A stretch of 64,000 nt of DNA, from positions 62,001 through 126,000 of IMG/VR virus record IMGVR_UViG_3300044568_003163. The stretch is one strand, 5' to 3'. The notes beneath the pieces are model-generated. The model was not told the origin of the DNA, made no database searches, and saw only the letters and a program-made list of their open reading frames with translations. A program made the translations under genes and the position numbers. Within the stretch, counting starts at the first letter, position 1. Each line of letters begins with the position of its first letter. This document shows, one piece after another, positions 2,004-12,817 of this stretch.

Positions 2004-2044
2004 TATTGTTCATTTCAATTTTGTTATTGCATTATTAGGAATAA

Positions 2045-2116
2045 CGATACTATAGGACTCGAACCTATACCTTCCAGCTCGCTCGCCGGAATTCTACCAA
2101 ATTAAACTAAATACCA
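2045..2116 (-). ncRNA. tRNA-like element with non-canonical anticodon loop
   Basis: D arm and T arm (ATAGGTTCGAGTCCTAT) present; 6-nt loop GAGCGA lacks U33. Confidence 0.5.
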
Positions 2117-2617: not shown

Positions 2618-2691
2618 AGCTGACAGTCAGGATCGAACTGACTCTGTTCCGGGTTACAAATCCGGTGCACCACCATTCATGCGTTGCCAGC
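2618..2691 (-). tRNA. tRNA-Thr(TGT)
   Basis: Loop TT-TGT-AA; cloverleaf. Confidence 0.85.
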
Positions 2692-2701
2692 ATATGTTTC
2701 G

Positions 2702-3603: not shown

Positions 3604-3700
3604 TGAAGACAATTGGGATCGAACCAATGGCACGCCTATGTTCCTTATCGATCATACCAATAAGTACTGAAGGTTGCTCTACCAACTGAGCTATATCTTC
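3604..3700 (-). ncRNA. tRNA-like RNA with expanded anticodon domain
   Basis: Intact acceptor, D and T arms; no 7-nt anticodon loop. Confidence 0.65.
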
Positions 3701-3776: not shown

Positions 3777-3917
3777 AGATGACCTTAAGGATTCGAACCT
3801 TTAACTTGTTTCCTCTTTTAGTTTTGCAAACCTACTCAATTCTACCGTGCCCAATACACTATTGCCAATCGTCATTTTCGAACATGACAGCCTTAAGTTA
3901 ATTACTCTTAAGATTTG

Positions 3918-3989
3918 TAGTCCCACCGGGAATCGAACCCGACTTTTCAGGATGAAAACCTGATGACCTAACCGATAGTCGATAGGACC
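3918..3989 (-). tRNA. tRNA-Glu(TTC)
   Basis: TCAGG-TTTTCAT-CCTGA. Confidence 0.9.
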
Positions 3990-4077
3990 AATTAAGTTAT
4001 ATCAAATTCTCCCGCAGAGATACCGACCCATTGCTGAGCCAGAGAGGACTTGAACCTCTGATTCTCAATAACTAATT
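3990..4077 (-). ncRNA. circularly permuted tRNA-like RNA (YrlA-type topology)
   Basis: Order is stem, T arm, GCAA-capped acceptor-like stem, TA, D-like arm, stem. Confidence 0.55.
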
Positions 4078-4173
4078 TAAAAGAATTAAAGAGTAGAGCT
4101 CTTCAACGATTTCGGCATTTCAGCTGGATCTTTATGCCAACTTCCTAATCCTTAGTCCGTTTAATTCTTGTAG

Positions 4174-4247
4174 TATTATGTACGGGACTCGAACCCGTGT
4201 TATCAACGTGAAAGGCTGACGTCCTAGACCAACTAGACGAACATAAC
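4174..4247 (-). tRNA. tRNA-Glu(TTC)
   Basis: TCAGC-CTTTCAC-GTTGA. Confidence 0.85.
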
Positions 4248-4251
4248 ATTT

Positions 4252-4464
4252 TTAAGCTTCTTCAGAGACAAGTCCTAAAACTTCTTCTCTGTAAATTTTA
4301 TTCAATTCACTTACTTCAATATCGATATTCGTTTGTGGATATCGGTGAAGTAAAATCTTAACTAATCTGATTCGTTTCTCAGCCAAATCTTGATTAAAGT
4401 CCATTTCAATCATTGCATCACTTAAATGAGATTGAATTGCGATTGATAATTTGATAGTTTCCAT
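4252..4464 (-). CDS. hypothetical protein
   Basis: ORF directly after a class I promoter. Confidence 0.65.
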   Translation of the reverse strand: METIKLSIAIQSHLSDAMIEMDFNQDLAEKRIRLVKILLHRYPQTNIDIEVSELNKIYREEVLGLVSEEA

Positions 4465-5092: not shown

Positions 5093-5551
5093 CTATCTAC
5101 AGATTCTATCAGCTACATATGAAGCCGAGCATGCATCTGGTTTACATCTAGCGTTATAACCTAATGATTCTACATAACCTAAAGCAGAACGCAGAATTGA
5201 ATTAGATTGATACTTAGGGTCTGGATTAAAATCCAAATCAATAAATGCAGGTTTTTCAATATCATTAGCTTCAAGCCATTGAGCTAATTCAACTGAATCT
5301 TCTACCTCTTTCCAAAGTCTAGTAAATCTATCTAAGATTCTAGGAATTGATTTACGAGAGTAGATAACGTGACCTCCTCGATTACCGTAATGTAAAACAA
5401 TAACCATTGCGTAAATTGTATTTCTTCCAATATTTTGCGAATCTGAACCGATATACATTTTGATGTCTTTACCAGTTGCGAGTTTGTCCTTTAAATAAGG
5501 AATTAAGTCAATTACTTGACCGTTTGTTAACGATTGAAATTTCCGGTCCAT
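5093..5551 (-). CDS. RNase H-like protein, YkuK/DUF458 family
   Basis: IGSDSQ, RLWKEVEDS, IDLDFN and ADR motifs. Confidence 0.8.
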   Translation of the reverse strand: MDRKFQSLTNGQVIDLIPYLKDKLATGKDIKMYIGSDSQNIGRNTIYAMVIVLHYGNRGGHVIYSRKSIPRILDRFTRLWKEVEDSVELAQWLEANDIEKPAFIDLDFNPDPKYQSNSILRSALGYVESLGYNARCKPDACSASYVADRICR

Positions 5552-5571
5552 GATTATTAAATTTATGTTAG

Positions 5572-5988: not shown

Positions 5989-6084
5989 TCATTCAAAAAC
6001 CTGCATACCATTCTCACATGCCTCAGGACGAGGGCATTCTACTGTTAACTGCGATGTTGTTAGTATGTGTGAAAGTATTAACAT
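5989..6084 (-). CDS. putative attenuator leader peptide 2 (MLILSHILTTSQLTVECPRPEACENGMQVFE)
   Basis: Lies between promoter and terminator; E-C-P-R-P-E-A-C-E core. Confidence 0.7.
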   Translation of the reverse strand: MLILSHILTTSQLTVECPRPEACENGMQVFE

Positions 6085-6139
6085 TTTAATTTTTATTAGC
6101 AAAGACTCTTTATCTTTGTTTAGTTCTTTTATATATCTT

Positions 6140-6630: not shown

Positions 6631-6741
6631 CAGGAATGTAAGGAATCGAACCTTAGCATCTTCCGAGACAGGGAGTAATTTATGCAGAATACAATCTTCG
6701 CAGATTGAGTTTTAAGCGTGCTACCATTACACCACATTCCT
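6631..6741 (-). ncRNA. tRNA-like RNA with ~60-nt replacement of the anticodon domain
   Basis: Perfect acceptor, D and T arms; internal CAATCT-GCGA-AGATTG hairpin. Confidence 0.7.
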
Positions 6742-6749
6742 GTATTTTG

Positions 6750-6866
6750 TGGGCTCATATGGGCTCGAACCATAATCTCTTCCTAATGACATCCTACCAT
6801 ACTAAAAAGGAATCGAACCTTAGACTCATTATCGAGAAAGCGCTTTGCCAATTAAGCTAATCGCCC
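6750..6866 (-). ncRNA. tRNA-like RNA with a second T-loop/D-loop inside the anticodon domain
   Basis: TAATGA/TCATTA stem encloses AAGGTTCGATTCCTT and AGTATGGTAG. Confidence 0.65.
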
Positions 6867-6872
6867 ATGTAG

Positions 6873-7004
6873 TGAAGAATCCTAGACTCGAACTAGGAAT
6901 GTCAATTAAGACGCCGGTTTTACATCCTTTAAATTGCTGAATAAACACTTTGCACAGTGTTTGCCTTTTTGGACCGGAGCGTTTACCAATTCCGCCAATT
7001 CTTC
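6873..7004 (-). ncRNA. class II tRNA body with ~54-nt anticodon loop
   Basis: CCGGT/ACCGG stem encloses a long loop ending TGTAAA; variable arm present. Confidence 0.7.
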
Positions 7005-7011
7005 ATTATTG

Positions 7012-7083
7012 TTCTCCCGCTGGGAGTCGAACCCAGCCTCATAGATTAAAAGTCTATTGCCCACACCAGTCTGCTACGAGAGA
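7012..7083 (-). tRNA. tRNA-Lys(TTT)
   Basis: ATAGA-CTTTTAA-TCTAT. Confidence 0.85.
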
Positions 7084-7783: not shown

Positions 7784-8230
7784 TTAAGCCAGAGATTCAA
7801 TAACCTCTTTTACTAATTTTGTATCGGCAAGACCTGGAAATTTCTTAACGAAAGCACCCATAGTCATACCTATTAATTTTTGTTTGTTTAATTCTAAAAC
7901 AGAACCGAGTAAAACATTAACTTCAGTTTCAATTTCAGCTCTAGTCATTTGCTTTGGCAAGTACTTTTCAATAACACCTAATTCATTAGCTTCAGATTCC
8001 ACTAAATCGAATCGACCAGCTTTTGTAAATTCTTCAATAGATTGTCTACGTTGTTTGATTGTAGAAATTACTGCATTTAGAACTAACTCATCAGTAAGTG
8101 GACCAGCATGCTTTGCCTTTTCAGCATCTTGGATTTTTGCCTTTAATCCACTTAATGCATTCTTCGCAATCGCGTTTTTCTCTTTGAATGCTACTATATA
8201 GTCAGCATTGATTGTTTCTCTTAAATTCAT
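7784..8230 (-). CDS. GatB/YqeY domain protein
   Basis: KQRRQSIEEF..AGRFDL..E..E..VIEKYLPKQM signature. Confidence 0.9.
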   Translation of the reverse strand: MNLRETINADYIVAFKEKNAIAKNALSGLKAKIQDAEKAKHAGPLTDELVLNAVISTIKQRRQSIEEFTKAGRFDLVESEANELGVIEKYLPKQMTRAEIETEVNVLLGSVLELNKQKLIGMTMGAFVKKFPGLADTKLVKEVIESLA

Positions 8231-8955: not shown

Positions 8956-9030
8956 TAGGAGATGACGGAATCGAACCGACGACCTTTTGCGTGTAAAACA
9001 AACGCTCTAAACCAACTGAGCTAATCTCCT
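8956..9030 (-). tRNA. tRNA-Val(TAC)
   Basis: TTTGT-TTTACAC-GCAAA. Confidence 0.9.
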
Positions 9031-9036
9031 AAATTG

Positions 9037-9110
9037 TAGGTAATATGAGACTCGAACTCATAACCTCCTCGGTATCAGCGAGGTGCTCTAACCAATTGAG
9101 CTAACTACCT
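9037..9110 (-). tRNA. tRNA-Ile(GAT)
   Basis: CCTCG-CTGATAC-CGAGG. Confidence 0.9.
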
Positions 9111-10104: not shown

Positions 10105-11421
10105 TTAACCTTCAGCTTCTTCGGTATCAATTACTCCAGAATCTTTTACGATTCCTTCAAGTACTTTGAATTCGAAAGACTTGAATTTGAATGTTTTGTT
10201 TACCAAACCACCTTCAATTCTTACACAAACTCCTTCTTTGATATGTCTAGTATCTAAGATAGATGGACCAGTTCCGAATGTTTCGACGGTGTTGCTGAAA
10301 TATTCTCGCAAATCTCTATCATCGAATTTATGAGTGATTGCTTCTAATTCGTTTAAGGTTATCGTAGCAACATGTGGTACAGTTTTTACACCTAATTCAT
10401 TACAACGTTTTACAACATCATTCCAAGCATAATCGATAGATTGACCATCTTCATTAGCAAATGTCATACGGTAAACATAAACCTCAGATTGAGTAGGTTC
10501 ACAACCATAAGAATAAGCCATAGACTTACCGTATTGTTTCGTAAACTCTTTATCACCCATTTTGGTTGTATCAACAGATGGCATAATTGCAGCTCCTGTA
10601 GATTCGTAACCTACAATTTCAAAATAAACGGTTTCACCTTTTCTTAAGTTACCTTTGAATAAGTTCATTGCTTTATCTCGGATGGTTGGGTCATGGAATT
10701 GATTTGCGGATTTTGATTCTCCTAAAACAACTCTACGAGTACCATTCAAATAAGCCCATTCTTTGTCGTTGATAGCTAATCCAAATTTAGTAACAAGTTT
10801 TTCTAACCAACCTAATTCTCTAGTCATTTGAACGTGACCAATACGACCTGAAGTACCGTGAAGTTTTTCAGTAATAATGATGTGTTGACCCTTTTCAAAT
10901 TCGTGGATACTCTTACCAAAGTGTCCGGTATCAAAATGTTCTTTGAACATTACAGAAGATCTAGAAACTCGGGTTTTCTTACCTTGATTTTCTCTAGCAA
11001 TTTTAGCCGTATTTGGATTTACATATTTGTTACAGATAGGTACACCTTTCCATTCGTCAAATTCAAATCCTTCTACATCTAAACCAGTTACCATAATGAA
11101 TCCAAAGTAATGTAATGGAACCCAGAAACCATCAGAGATTTCACCTCTAAATTTTTGAGCTCTTACTCTTCGGTTTGCATCGAACATTCCACCTTTCTCA
11201 TCTTTTCTAGCATTTAACTCGGCATCACGATAAAGGTTGTTTGCTTTACAGAACTCATCGGATAACTGACCATCAGATGGAAAGTAAACTCCTAAATGTC
11301 CTTCTAAAGAATCTAAACCAATTACTACTTGATTACCGTGACAAGTTGCTAATTGAACTTTGTCTGCGTTAGGATGTGGTCTCACGTTTGTCAACCTAGT
11401 GACGATTGCATTGTATGCCAT
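10105..11421 (-). CDS. RNA ligase (DRB0094/Rnl2-like with N-terminal OB-like domain)
   Basis: HPNADK, TEKLHGTS adenylation motif, EGVCVR, FKFKS. Confidence 0.85.
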   Translation of the reverse strand: MAYNAIVTRLTNVRPHPNADKVQLATCHGNQVVIGLDSLEGHLGVYFPSDGQLSDEFCKANNLYRDAELNARKDEKGGMFDANRRVRAQKFRGEISDGFWVPLHYFGFIMVTGLDVEGFEFDEWKGVPICNKYVNPNTAKIARENQGKKTRVSRSSVMFKEHFDTGHFGKSIHEFEKGQHIIITEKLHGTSGRIGHVQMTRELGWLEKLVTKFGLAINDKEWAYLNGTRRVVLGESKSANQFHDPTIRDKAMNLFKGNLRKGETVYFEIVGYESTGAAIMPSVDTTKMGDKEFTKQYGKSMAYSYGCEPTQSEVYVYRMTFANEDGQSIDYAWNDVVKRCNELGVKTVPHVATITLNELEAITHKFDDRDLREYFSNTVETFGTGPSILDTRHIKEGVCVRIEGGLVNKTFKFKSFEFKVLEGIVKDSGVIDTEEAEG

Positions 11422-11507: not shown

Positions 11508-11618
11508 TAGTCAGAACAGGATTCGAACCTGTATGGTGTTACCTAGAGTACTCAATACAGAGCGGTAAATCGGTTACGAACCATTACTCTTAGCGTCTTC
11601 CAATTCCGCCACCTGACT
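11508..11618 (-). ncRNA. tRNA-like RNA (Leu-like D arm) with expanded anticodon domain
   Basis: Intact acceptor, D and T arms; AGAGTA/TACTCT stem encloses ~35 nt. Confidence 0.65.
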
Positions 11619-11634
11619 CGATAGAACTAGCCTA

Positions 11635-11985
11635 TCATGATTGTGTAGATTTAATGTACACAATTATTCCAATGATTGAAAGAAAGCACAATGCTAATAC
11701 TGTTATTGCAGGTAAATAATCTTCTTTCTCTCTCCAAATTTTGTAATTATATCGAGGTTCGTTCTGCTTCCACGAATGGTCTTCAGACTTCTCAGACTTA
11801 ACATATTTTTTGTTTAGTTTTTTTAGGGATTTCCTAATTTCCTTTTTACATGGTTCAGCACCACAACAATAAAAAAATGATATATCTGTTTCGCTTATCA
11901 GCTTAGTAGTAGCTTCTTCCTCGCAACAATAACAATAATTTGGTTTCATATTAATACTCTTTAATGAGTACGGTACCATCTCCAT
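11635..11985 (-). CDS. Cys-rich protein with C-terminal TM
   Basis: CxCC and CCxxxxC motifs, hydrophobic tail; true start probably near 11949. Confidence 0.55.
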   Translation of the reverse strand: MEMVPYSLKSINMKPNYCYCCEEEATTKLISETDISFFYCCGAEPCKKEIRKSLKKLNKKYVKSEKSEDHSWKQNEPRYNYKIWREKEDYLPAITVLALCFLSIIGIIVYIKSTQS

Positions 11986-12817
11986 GCTCTAAACAGTCAA
12001 CGCAAAAGATAGTGTCTTTTACTTCTGGCCATCTACCAGCAGTCGGTTCAGTATCGTATTCAGTTACTTTGTGATGGGGTGTATGTCCGATTACTTGGTC
12101 ATAACCTTCTAATGCATCCCATCTTAATCTTCTCGGTCTAATCCAAACAGGACCTGCAAATTCTGAATATCCACCAGAATCTCCATCTACGTTAAATAAA
12201 ATATTTAAACGATATTGCCAAGCTTTATTGATAATCTCATCCGGCCTAAGATTCCAATCTCCTTCAAAATCTGCTTTGAATCGGAAACCGTCTCTTTTAA
12301 CCGTTGCATGCAATTGGCGTAACCAACCATGAGTTACTCCAGCATGAGTCCATAAAGTTCGCTTTAACCTACCATCGATTTCTCTTTCATGATAATATGC
12401 GAAAGTAAATTTGTCGATGTTTTTAGTAAACAACTCTTGAAAATCAAATTTCATTTCAGGTCGATAACCTGAACAGATTTGATCGGCTACAATATATTGA
12501 ATATCGTGATTTCCTAAAAGCAAGACTATTTTGTCTGGATATTCGGTTTTTAAATGTATGATTTCCTCTAGATTTAATTTCATCTCTAGGTTTTGTACAT
12601 CAAATGAATCTACGTAATCTCCAACGAAAACGATTTTATCCATTTCGTTAAAAATAGGATAGGTGTCTTCAAACGCTTCTTTTGCTCCGTTATCTACTTC
12701 CTGTCTCCAGCTATTATAGTCCGTTAGAGAGCCGAATAACACAGTCTTCCAGGTATTTCTTCCGTGGATATCTCCGATAGACATGATTTTCATTGTAGTT
12801 TTCATTTTATGGTTCAT
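11951..12817 (-). CDS. calcineurin-like metallophosphoesterase
   Basis: GDIHG, GDYVD, GNHD, THAG and GHT motifs. Confidence 0.9.
   Translation of the reverse strand: MNHKMKTTMKIMSIGDIHGRNTWKTVLFGSLTDYNSWRQEVDNGAKEAFEDTYPIFNEMDKIVFVGDYVDSFDVQNLEMKLNLEEIIHLKTEYPDKIVLLLGNHDIQYIVADQICSGYRPEMKFDFQELFTKNIDKFTFAYYHEREIDGRLKRTLWTHAGVTHGWLRQLHATVKRDGFRFKADFEGDWNLRPDEIINKAWQYRLNILFNVDGDSGGYSEFAGPVWIRPRRLRWDALEGYDQVIGHTPHHKVTEYDTEPTAGRWPEVKDTIFCVDCLEHGDGTVLIKEY

What the first reader, a model, noticed from the sequence alone, without database searches (positions are those of the whole stretch)
3990..4077. Circularly permuted tRNA mimic with YrlA/Y-RNA topology
The minus strand reads terminal stem, AGAGG-TTCAAGT-CCTCT, CTGGCTCA-GCAA-TGGGTCGG, TA, TCTC-TGCGG-GAGA, terminal stem. 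A T arm followed by a loop-closed acceptor stem and a D arm is the layout of bacterial YrlA RNAs, which bind Ro60/Rsr. No Ro60 gene is present in this window.
Basis: partly seen in the sequence, partly recalled or inferred. Interest (0 to 1): 0.62.

Follow-up and report, generated by a model that had tools for sequence, protein, structure and literature searches.

The report
Stripped-down Y-RNA-like tRNA mimic in phage
Between two tRNA genes of a 294-kb lake phage lies a short stretch built like a tRNA turned inside out, the same design as the YrlA 'Y RNAs' that partner with Ro60 proteins, but it lacks the Ro-binding part and several family hallmarks, so it is a minimal or decaying relative, not a proven Y RNA.

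Summary
The layout is real. On the minus strand, 4059-4008 reads T arm, 8-bp GCAA-capped hairpin, UA, short D-like arm. It sits in the 183-nt spacer between two tRNA-Glu genes, inside an array of about 40 tRNA genes of a 294-kb freshwater phage. The claimed terminal stem is no better than chance.

A scan of viral contigs for the same geometry recovered mainly bona fide YrlA-like RNAs. Nine of ten of those records encode Ro60 (TROVE), often directly adjacent. Relatives of this phage (L012, L014) carry such RNAs plus Ro60 at or beside their tRNA arrays.

The window copy fails most membership tests:
- no Rfam YrlA hit;
- no exact GNCGAAN0-1G motif;
- no long Ro-binding stem;
- a non-canonical D arm;
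- no anticodon-like (V) arm;
- no sequence-profile similarity beyond tRNA-likeness;
- absent from the closest non-identical relative.

The genome has no TROVE gene. It does encode a Ro60-fold protein (DUF2828/DUF7788) 94.5 kb away, outside the window. That protein class accompanies YrlA-like RNAs in other phages.

Verdict: a minimal, orphan YrlA-type tRNA mimic, either functional or a relic. It is a new variant of a known kind.

The parts
4043..4059 (-). T-arm mimic: 5-bp stem AGAGG/CCUCU with the 7-nt T loop UUCAAGU. It is preceded by C4060, in the position of tRNA C48.
   Evidence: an orphan T arm outside any called tRNA; aligned to the T arm of the phage YrlA core model.
4023..4042 (-). Acceptor-stem mimic: an 8-bp hairpin (7 bp plus a closing A-U pair) capped by a GCAA (GNRA) tetraloop, so the 'acceptor end' is closed.
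   Evidence: Nine Ro60-linked viral elements have the same geometry.
4021..4022 (-). UA linker, equivalent to tRNA positions 8-9.
   Evidence: Invariant in the phage YrlA-like set.
4008..4020 (-). Reduced D-arm mimic: stem UCUC/GAGA (or 5 bp) with loop UGCGG. It keeps G15-like and GG (18/19-like) bases but lacks the A14/A21 positions and the canonical GCUCA..GGUAGAGC sequence.
   Evidence: the alignment shows deletions and mismatches in the D arm.
4060..4077 (-). 5' flank with AGUUAU (4073-4068).
   Evidence: The pairing with the 3' flank is not above chance. The resemblance to the RGUUAY motif of phage YrlA-like RNAs is not backed by a sequence profile.
3990..4007 (-). 3' flank with AUAACU (4000-3995). 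It ends exactly at the 5' end of the downstream tRNA-Glu, so RNase P cleavage of that tRNA would set the 3' end of the element.
   Evidence: The processing step is inference.
4078..4172 (-). Rest of the tRNA-Glu/tRNA-Glu spacer, upstream of the element. It holds GCCGAA (4116-4111), a near miss to the YrlA GNCGAAN0-1G motif, and no ORF.
   Evidence: The motif definition comes from PMC4201824.
4173..4247 (-). Upstream tRNA-Glu(UUC). Its 3' end bounds the spacer.
3917..3989 (-). Downstream tRNA-Glu(UUC). Its 5' end abuts the element.

Best explanation
The element is a tRNA-derived, circularly permuted tRNA mimic of the YrlA (bacterial/phage Y RNA) design. It has a T arm, an acceptor stem closed by a GNRA tetraloop, UA, and a reduced D arm.

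Shown:
- the sequence architecture;
- that this architecture in viral contigs is almost always a Ro60-linked YrlA-like RNA;
- that related phages carry such RNAs in or next to their tRNA arrays;
- that this phage encodes a Ro60-fold DUF2828/DUF7788 protein elsewhere in its genome;
- that this protein class occurs with YrlA-like RNAs in other phages.

Inferred:
- The element is co-transcribed with the tRNA array on the minus strand. It is released when the flanking tRNA-Glu genes are processed; RNase P at 3989/3990 sets its 3' end.
- Its T loop and the GG of its D loop form a tRNA-like elbow.
- It engages tRNA-recognising enzymes (RNase P, TruB and similar) and possibly the phage's Ro60-like protein or a host Rsr. 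This would be part of the RNA quality-control and repair kit encoded nearby (RNA ligase 10105-11421, metallophosphoesterase 11951-12817).
- Because it lacks a recognisable Ro-binding helix, it is a minimal version. It carries only the 'effector' tRNA-like module.
For: - Architecture.
- Chance of a hairpin plus D-like hairpin after any T arm of the array: about 0.03.
- Geometry scan of viral contigs plus a pairing filter: 9 other loci with 8/8 pairs and 2 with 7/8, against a rough hand estimate of about 0.02 expected by chance.
- Rfam YrlA scores those loci 33-45 bits, E 1e-6 to 1e-3.
- 9 of 10 of those records encode TROVE. In six the Ro60 ORF abuts the RNA on the same strand.
- Relatives L012 and L014 (RNaseH-like protein 71% and 57% identical) have YrlA-like RNAs and Ro60 at or beside the tRNA array.
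- A complete 462-kb phage (G008) has at least 4 Y-like RNAs inside its tRNA array, with Ro60 118 kb away.
- A core covariance model from 9 phage YrlA-like RNAs scores the element 41.5 bits, rank 2 in the array.
- The own genome encodes a 478-aa DUF2828+DUF7788 protein at genome 160,566-162,002, minus strand. hhalign against phage Ro60: 98.1%, E 8e-14, 371 columns. The top 13 PDB fold matches are all Ro60/TROVE.
- This protein type accompanies YrlA-like RNAs in Mycobacterium phage Whirlwind (adjacent) and Escherichia phage HY02 (about 1 kb). In G018, G019 and G020 the RNA lies 10-18 kb from the gene. None has TROVE, and G019 is complete.
- All 17-18 base pairs of the core are intact. The element is identical in two further lake metagenomes.
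Against: - The Rfam YrlA model gives no hit on the element at E<=10, while it does hit tandem-tRNA junctions in the same genome.
- The core model cannot separate the element from tandem-tRNA junctions; the top hit, 43.7 bits, is one.
- The training set was found with a pattern taken from the element, so loop and length agreement is circular.
- The full-length V-less model gives only 21.9 bits, rank 9. The sequence profile gives 4.6 bits, E 1.5.
- The D arm is non-canonical and there is no V or anticodon-like arm.
- The terminal stem is not above chance.
- GCCGAA at 4116-4111 misses the final G of the motif and has no pairing partner.
- The closest non-identical relative, L010, has the same two tRNA-Glu genes with an unrelated 49-nt spacer.
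- No YrlA-like RNA lies next to the own Ro60-like gene.
- There is no expression evidence.
Confidence: 0.45

Rival explanations
1. It is a non-functional relic. An ancestor carried a full YrlA-like RNA with a canonical Ro60, as relatives L012 and L014 still do. This lineage lost Ro60, and the RNA was truncated to its T/acceptor/D core. That core now drifts as spacer DNA.
For: - The Ro-binding stem, the V/anticodon-like arm and the outer conserved motifs of both phage subfamilies are missing.
- The D loop is shrunken.
- There is no TROVE gene or fragment in the genome.
- The element is absent from the 95%-related L010.
- The terminal stem is at chance level.
Against: - All three core helices are perfect (17-18 pairs, no mismatch) and the T loop is consensus. 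Decay should have left mismatches.
- The genome keeps a Ro60-fold protein of the type that accompanies YrlA-like RNAs elsewhere.
- There is no sequence similarity to the relatives' YrlA-like RNAs that would prove descent.
Confidence: 0.3
2. It is a remnant of two tandem copies of one tRNA gene. The T arm and 3' acceptor strand come from copy 1, a 5-nt spacer follows, and the 5' acceptor strand and D arm come from copy 2. The outer parts were deleted. The YrlA look is then automatic, the known false positive of YrlA searches.
For: - Chen et al. 2014 discarded tandem tRNAs for this reason (PMC4201824).
- Tandem tRNAs 0-9 nt apart are common in this array, and their junctions score like the element with both models.
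- The array also holds tRNA debris at 6742-6872.
Against: - It needs two precise deletions plus a D-loop deletion.
- The 'spacer' is exactly a GNRA tetraloop closed by A-U, as in Ro60-linked elements.
- No remnants of an anticodon arm were recognised on either side, by reading and by BLAST.
- No tRNA in the window or in relatives matches the acceptor or D sequences.
Confidence: 0.12
3. It is a genuine circularly permuted tRNA gene, matured by circularisation and then RNase P/Z cleavage, as in the red alga Cyanidioschyzon. The neighbouring phage RNA ligase would do the joining.
For: - The 3' half precedes the 5' half.
- The acceptor stem is 7 bp with A73.
- An RNA ligase gene lies 6 kb away.
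- The array holds tRNA genes with 25-55-nt inserts in the anticodon region.
Against: - There is no anticodon stem-loop.
- The variable region is 1 nt and the D loop 3-5 nt.
- After in-silico re-permutation, ARAGORN calls nothing at normal thresholds and only a pseudo-tRNA at lowered ones.
- No bulge-helix-bulge motif is visible in the flanks (reading).
Confidence: 0.03
4. The spacer functions as one long imperfect hairpin, for example an RNase III-type processing site in the polycistronic tRNA transcript. The tRNA-like core would be incidental.
For: The MFE of the 183-nt spacer is a long hairpin of -44.2 kcal/mol. It beats the tRNA-like fold by 3.2 kcal/mol, and the sense strand folds 12.6 kcal/mol better than the antisense strand.
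Against: - It is not significant against dinucleotide shuffles (z -1.2, 11%).
- The spacer is not conserved in L010.
- It does not explain the consensus T loop, the GNRA cap or the UA.
Confidence: 0.05

Closest known systems
YrlA (Rfam RF02553; Chen et al. 2014, PMC4201824), the tRNA-mimicking Y RNA bound by bacterial Ro60/Rsr
   Same: - The order is the same: T arm, loop-closed acceptor-like stem, D arm.
- It has a consensus T loop, UA at positions 8-9, GG in the D loop and a C in the position of C48.
- It has a 7-bp acceptor plus discriminator, as in the RNase P-cleavable M. smegmatis YrlA.
   Different: - No Rfam hit.
- The D arm is not the near-invariant YrlA D arm.
- No exact GNCGAAN0-1G motif, no significant terminal stem, no V stem-loop.
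- Not within 4 kb of a Ro60 gene. The only Ro60-fold gene is of the DUF2828 type, 94.5 kb away.
Phage YrlA-like RNAs found here next to Ro60 genes, in two forms. V-type: L022, L030, L053, L048, L024, L034, L032. V-less type: 27 loci, alignment A6.
   Same: - The T/acceptor/UA geometry is identical, including the A-U closed GNRA cap in the V-type set.
- They lie in or beside phage tRNA arrays, including in relatives of this phage (L012, L014) and in jumbo phage G008.
- There is an RGUUAY-like word 7-8 nt before the T arm.
   Different: Those RNAs have a fifth, anticodon-like arm (before T or after D), a covarying terminal stem, conserved outer motifs and a canonical or GAC/GUC D arm. The window element has none of these. 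It scores only 21.9 bits with the V-less model and 4.6 bits with its sequence profile.
Tandem (dimeric) tRNA junctions
   Same: A T arm followed by a D arm with acceptor strands in between. Both models score them equally well.
   Different: The flanking halves of the two tRNAs are absent here. The acceptor strands pair perfectly, and the linker is a GNRA tetraloop.
Circularly permuted tRNA genes of Cyanidioschyzon merolae and some archaea (named from my own knowledge)
   Same: The 3' half lies upstream of the 5' half, joined across the acceptor end.
   Different: There is no anticodon arm and no BHB motif. The element is not recognised as a tRNA after re-permutation.
Two-piece tmRNA from permuted ssrA genes (from my own knowledge)
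   Same: A permuted tRNA-like domain in which the T arm precedes the 5' acceptor strand.
   Different: There is no tag reading frame, no pseudoknots and no G-U alanine identity pair. ARAGORN finds no tmRNA.

Membership tests
YrlA (RF02553) | Score at or above the Rfam gathering threshold (69 bits) | tested here: not met
   No YrlA hit on 3950-4180 at E<=10. None is among the 16 genome hits, which go down to 10.3 bits. However, bona fide Ro60-adjacent phage elements also stay below the threshold, at 33-45 bits.
YrlA (RF02553) | T stem-loop with the tRNA T-loop consensus | tested here: met
   AGAGG-UUCAAGU-CCUCU at 4059-4043.
YrlA (RF02553) | Acceptor-like stem-loop (AS) directly between the T and D arms | tested here: met
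   An 8/8-bp hairpin with a GCAA loop at 4042-4023, followed by UA. Nine Ro60-linked elements have the same geometry.
YrlA (RF02553) | Near-invariant D stem-loop (UAGCUCA...GGUAGAGC) | tested here: not met
   The element has UA-UCUC-UGCGG-GAGA. The alignment to the core model shows deletions and mismatches there. Only G15-like and GG bases are kept.
YrlA (RF02553) | GNCGAAN0-1G motif near the 5' end (proposed Ro60 contact) | tested here: not met
   Absent from 3990-4077. The nearest match is GCCGAA at 4116-4111, followed by AU rather than (N)G (definition). By a rough hand estimate, a 5-base match in 95 nt is expected about 0.09 times.
YrlA (RF02553) | Long terminal stem formed by the 5' and 3' ends | tested here: not met
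   Only 6+4 AU-rich pairs are possible before the downstream tRNA begins. 25.6% of flank shuffles do as well.
YrlA (RF02553) | Encoded within about 4 kb of a Ro60/Rsr (TROVE) gene on the same strand | tested here: not met
   No TROVE gene is in the 294-kb record, which is 91% complete. A Ro60-fold DUF2828/DUF7788 gene lies on the same strand but 94.5 kb away.
YrlA (RF02553) | Bound by Ro60/Rsr, and carries tRNA modifications | not testable with these tools
   This needs immunoprecipitation and modification mapping. The only RNA run holding related sequence carries an L010-like variant without the element.
V-less phage YrlA-like family (alignment A6, model R2) | 5' AGUUACUUC word, T arm, AS, UA, 3-bp D arm, anticodon-like arm, covarying terminal stem | tested here: not met
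   R2 gives 21.9 bits, rank 9 behind tandem tRNAs. nhmmer gives 4.6 bits, E 1.5. There is no anticodon-like arm.
Circularly permuted tRNA gene | All tRNA parts present, including the anticodon arm, and recognisable as a tRNA after re-permutation | tested here: not met
   There is no anticodon loop. ARAGORN finds nothing at default thresholds and only a pseudo-tRNA at lowered thresholds.
Tandem tRNA junction remnant | Recognisable remains of the other halves of two tRNAs on either side | tested here: inconclusive
   No convincing anticodon-arm remnants by reading. No tRNA in the window or in relatives matches the acceptor or D sequences. Strong decay cannot be excluded.

The most novel reading that the evidence does not exclude
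The element is a working minimal Y RNA that acts in trans with the phage's DUF2828/DUF7788 protein, a Ro60 paralogue found in hundreds of cultured phages. If so, phage tRNA arrays commonly hide Ro-Y RNA quality-control systems whose RNA and protein genes are far apart. It would also mean the tRNA-like module alone (T arm, capped acceptor, D arm, about 52 nt) is enough for function.
Probability: 0.2. Interest if true: 0.65.

Novelty: new variant of a known kind. Interest (0 to 1): 0.5.

Why it matters
Y RNAs tether Ro60 to RNA-degrading or repair enzymes, and their bacterial and phage biology is still poorly known.

If the element works, it would define the smallest natural YrlA-type tRNA mimic. 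It would also link the very common phage DUF2828 'RNA-binding protein', shown here to have the Ro60 fold, to Y-like RNAs hidden in tRNA arrays. That bears on how large phages protect or police their tRNA pools during infection.

If it is a relic, it documents gain and loss of Ro-Y modules among closely related lake phages.

In both cases it shows that current YrlA models miss such copies and confuse them with tandem tRNAs.

Tried and rejected
- my first geometry pattern had 12 N where 11 were needed, so its blank result means nothing. The corrected, wider pattern was used and the exact one.
- the metagenome scan for stem variants with the same loops found none.
- the spacer has no repeat elsewhere in the genome. 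The many short AT-rich matches are noise, not a promoter motif.
- sigma-70 promoter and terminator scans are at chance level in this region.
- lake and estuary metagenomes hold the phage. Two runs carry the spacer unchanged, so there is no covariation. The one RNA run holds only an L010-like variant, so there is no expression evidence.
- the long-hairpin alternative fold is not significant.
- the spacers of L010 and the window are not alignable, so the extent of the inserted or deleted unit cannot be defined.
- full-length models of the V-less family give no specific signal on the element.
- the DUF7788 search in relatives found nothing, but it also had no positive control.
- there is no YrlA-like RNA beside the phage's own Ro60-like gene.

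Full report
**Where the element lies.** The window is positions 62,001-126,000 of a 294-kb IMG/VR virus record, 91% complete. It holds an array of 35 ARAGORN tRNA genes plus further Rfam tRNA matches, all on the minus strand, between 1592 and 9268. The finding lies in the 183-nt spacer (3990-4172) between two different tRNA-Glu(UUC) genes, at 4173-4247 and 3917-3989. Public runs that hold the sequence are lake and estuary metagenomes.

**Checking the observation.**
- T arm 4059-4043;
- 8-bp hairpin with a GCAA loop, 4042-4023;
- UA at 4022-4021;
- D-like arm 4020-4008;
- AU-rich flanks that can pair.

RNAfold returns this four-way junction for 3990-4077 (-22.1 kcal/mol, z -1.46).

The core is unlikely to be chance. 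A perfect hairpin of 8 bp or more, 2 nt, then a hairpin of 4 bp or more, directly after any of the 41 T arms of the array, is expected 0.03 times. The GNRA cap and the UA come on top of that.

The terminal stem is not supported. 25.6% of flank shuffles stabilise the fold as much.

Folding energy alone supports neither the core (z -1.2) nor the alternative long hairpin that the whole spacer prefers (-44.2 against -41.0 kcal/mol; z -1.2).

**Direct family tests.**
- Rfam has a YrlA model, RF02553, with a gathering score of 69 bits. It gives no hit on the element at E<=10. In this genome it hits only tandem-tRNA junctions, at 23 bits or less.
- Chen et al. 2014 define YrlA by proximity to Rsr on the same strand, a GNCGAAN0-1G motif near the 5' end, near-invariant T and D stem-loops and an acceptor-like stem between them. 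They warn that dimeric tRNAs are false positives (PMC4201824).
- The element has the T arm and the acceptor-like stem. Its D arm is non-canonical. The nearest motif-like word, GCCGAA at 4116-4111, misses the final G.

**Relatives of the phage.** An RNaseH-like ORF inside the array (5093-5551) retrieved seven related viral loci.
- L009 is identical.
- L010 (95% protein identity) has the same two tRNA-Glu genes at 97.5-100% identity, but an unrelated 49-nt spacer. The element is therefore absent from the closest non-identical relative.
- Two lake metagenomes carry the spacer without a single difference. The only RNA run holds an L010-like variant. So there is no covariation and no expression evidence.

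**What else has this geometry.** I scanned viral contigs for this pattern: T loop, 10 free bases, A, GNRA, T, 7 free bases, TA. I then filtered for pairing of the two 8-nt strands. Besides the phage's own copy, nine loci had 8/8 pairs and two had 7/8. My rough hand estimate of the chance expectation is about 0.02.

All the elements kept for the core alignment carry a canonical or near-canonical D arm (one filter-passing locus, L057, has none and was left out), and most have a further anticodon-like hairpin and a long terminal stem.
- Rfam YrlA scores them 33-45 bits (E 1e-6 to 1e-3), mostly over the full model.
- Nine of ten of these records encode a TROVE protein.
- In L022, L030, L053, L034, L032 and L057 the Ro60 ORF abuts the RNA on the same strand.

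This result is partly circular for loop identities and lengths, because the pattern came from the element.

**YrlA-like RNAs in related tRNA arrays.** A scan for orphan T arms showed YrlA-like RNAs in the arrays of two relatives of this phage, L012 and L014. Both records encode Ro60 next to these RNAs.

A complete 462-kb phage (G008, locus L044) has at least four Y-like RNAs inside its tRNA array near 190 kb, while its Ro60 gene is at 308 kb. Array-embedded Y-like RNAs far from their protein gene therefore exist.

**A second subfamily.** I call it V-less. A second pattern retrieved it: 27 distinct elements, of which 23 were aligned as A6. Their order is 5' strand, T arm, acceptor hairpin, UA, 3-bp D arm, anticodon-like arm, 3' strand.
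- 20 of 25 consensus pairs covary.
- 20 of 27 have a Ro60 ORF on the same strand within the fetched locus.

**Does the window element belong to these families?**
- A core model (R1: T + acceptor + D, from nine V-type elements) scores it 41.5 bits, rank 2 in the array. A tandem-tRNA junction scores 43.7 bits and others 33-37 bits. The model therefore does not discriminate.
- The full V-less model gives 21.9 bits, rank 9.
- The V-less sequence profile gives 4.6 bits, E 1.5.
- The shared RGUUAY word before the T arm is thus not statistically backed.
- After re-permutation into tRNA order the element is not called a tRNA at normal thresholds.

**Is there really no Ro60?** There is no TROVE match in the genome by three tests:
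- Pfam;
- an HMM of phage Ro60 proteins (best E 0.14-1.2);
- tblastn with the relatives' Ro60.

All three weak signals, however, fell in one ORF outside the window, at genome 160,566-162,002 on the minus strand. It encodes 478 aa with DUF2828 plus DUF7788, and matches PHROG 850, 'RNA-binding protein'.
- Profile-profile comparison with phage Ro60 gives 98.1% probability, E 8e-14, over 371 columns.
- An AlphaFold model (pLDDT 79) has Ro60/TROVE structures as its 13 best PDB matches over nearly its full length.

This protein type is common in cultured phages, with 710 records. Some mycobacteriophage records name it 'Ro-like RNA binding protein'. It accompanies YrlA-like RNAs:
- immediately downstream of the gene in Mycobacterium phage Whirlwind (Rfam 38.3 bits, R1 59.9 bits);
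- about 1 kb away in Escherichia phage HY02;
- 10-18 kb away in three viral records that have no TROVE gene, one of them complete.

No such RNA lies beside this phage's own gene. There are essentially no T arms outside the array; the one exception is at genome 50,638.

**Interpretation.** The best reading (confidence 0.45) is a minimal YrlA-type tRNA mimic. It would be co-transcribed with the array and released by processing of the flanking tRNAs. It would present a tRNA-like elbow and a capped 7-bp acceptor stem to tRNA-recognising enzymes, and possibly to the phage's Ro60-like protein or a host Rsr. The processing and binding steps are inferred, not shown.

The main rival (0.3) is that it is a relic of a fuller YrlA-like RNA. 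Truncation, loss in L010 and lack of any Ro-binding determinant favour this. The perfectly intact helices argue against it.

A remnant of two tandem tRNA copies (0.12), a true permuted tRNA gene (0.03) and a long processing hairpin (0.05) are less likely.

**Novelty.** Y RNAs that mimic tRNA, including in phages, are known (PMC4201824). What is new here is an orphan, reduced copy inside a tRNA array, in a genome whose only Ro60-fold protein is of the DUF2828 type and lies 94.5 kb away. I therefore rate it a new variant of a known kind.

Noticed in passing
window 6631-6741, 6873-7004, 11508-11618, 3604-3700 (all minus strand): Four tRNA-like genes have perfect 7-bp acceptor stems and normal D and T arms, but 25-55 extra nucleotides in the anticodon region. 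Rfam tRNA scores them 31-46 bits and ARAGORN misses them. They are too short for group I introns. They could be tRNAs with short intervening sequences or long-armed tRNA mimics. An RNA ligase gene lies nearby.
   Followed up: partly
window 6742-6872 (minus strand): tRNA debris: orphan T arms at 6758-6774 and about 6806-6822, and a partial tRNA match at 6806-6859 (20.7 bits). This shows that tRNA genes decay in this array.
   Followed up: partly
window 5093-5551, 7784-8230, 10105-11421, 11951-12817 (all minus strand): Protein genes interleaved with or next to the tRNA array: an RNaseH-like protein (PF04308), a YqeY-like protein, an RNA ligase with a PHA02142 OB fold, and a calcineurin-like phosphoesterase. 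Together they look like an RNA repair or tRNA maintenance kit.
   Followed up: partly
outside the window: genome 160,566-162,002 minus strand (L129:567-2003): The DUF2828+DUF7788 protein (PHROG 850) has the Ro60 fold: hhalign 98.1% against phage Ro60, and the top 13 PDB matches are all Ro60/TROVE. The family has 710 records among cultured phages, including Felixounavirus, Listeria, Staphylococcus, Campylobacter, mycobacteriophages and jumbo phages.
   Followed up: yes
L074-L127 (alignment A6), e.g. L095:239-377, L127:7357-7492: This is a subfamily of Ro60-adjacent phage RNAs in which a complete cloverleaf is permuted differently from classical YrlA: T arm, capped acceptor, D arm, then an anticodon-like arm with a CU-NNN-RA loop whose 'anticodon' varies. 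The terminal stem leaves from the variable-loop position. I could not tell whether this permutation has been described.
   Followed up: partly
L044 (record G008, about 190 kb): 4189-4310, about 5997-6135, and T arms at 5555-5571 and 2684-2700, minus strand: Four Y-like RNAs lie inside the tRNA array of a complete 462-kb phage. Their 5' strands read GGGCCGAU/A...GGGUUAUC and their 3' strands read CACUUGCCC. From memory, this closely resembles the Ro-binding helix of vertebrate Y RNAs. The Ro60 gene is 118 kb away.
   Followed up: partly
L131:7100-7400 minus strand (genome about 162,100-162,400): The 440-nt gap upstream of the Ro60-like gene holds four to five copies of TTCAGCAA. The word is not enriched in the window as a whole (6 found, 3.4 expected).
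   Followed up: partly
window 2044-2116 (minus strand): ARAGORN calls a tRNA with a four-base anticodon (agcg); Rfam tRNA gives 36.3 bits. It may be a miscall, a pseudogene or a frameshift-type tRNA. L010 has a similar call (ctga) at 6971-7057.
   Followed up: no
outside the window: genome 50,638-50,654 minus strand (L132:1105-1161): This is the only clean T arm outside the array. No tRNA or tmRNA is called around it, and R1 gives 20.8 bits.
   Followed up: partly
window 8986-9067 and other tandem tRNA junctions: Several neighbouring tRNAs have partly complementary acceptor strands across the junction, for example 6 of 8 pairs between tRNA-Ile and tRNA-Val. This makes them score up to 43.7 bits with a YrlA-core model. 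It is a practical trap for Y RNA searches in phage arrays.
   Followed up: partly
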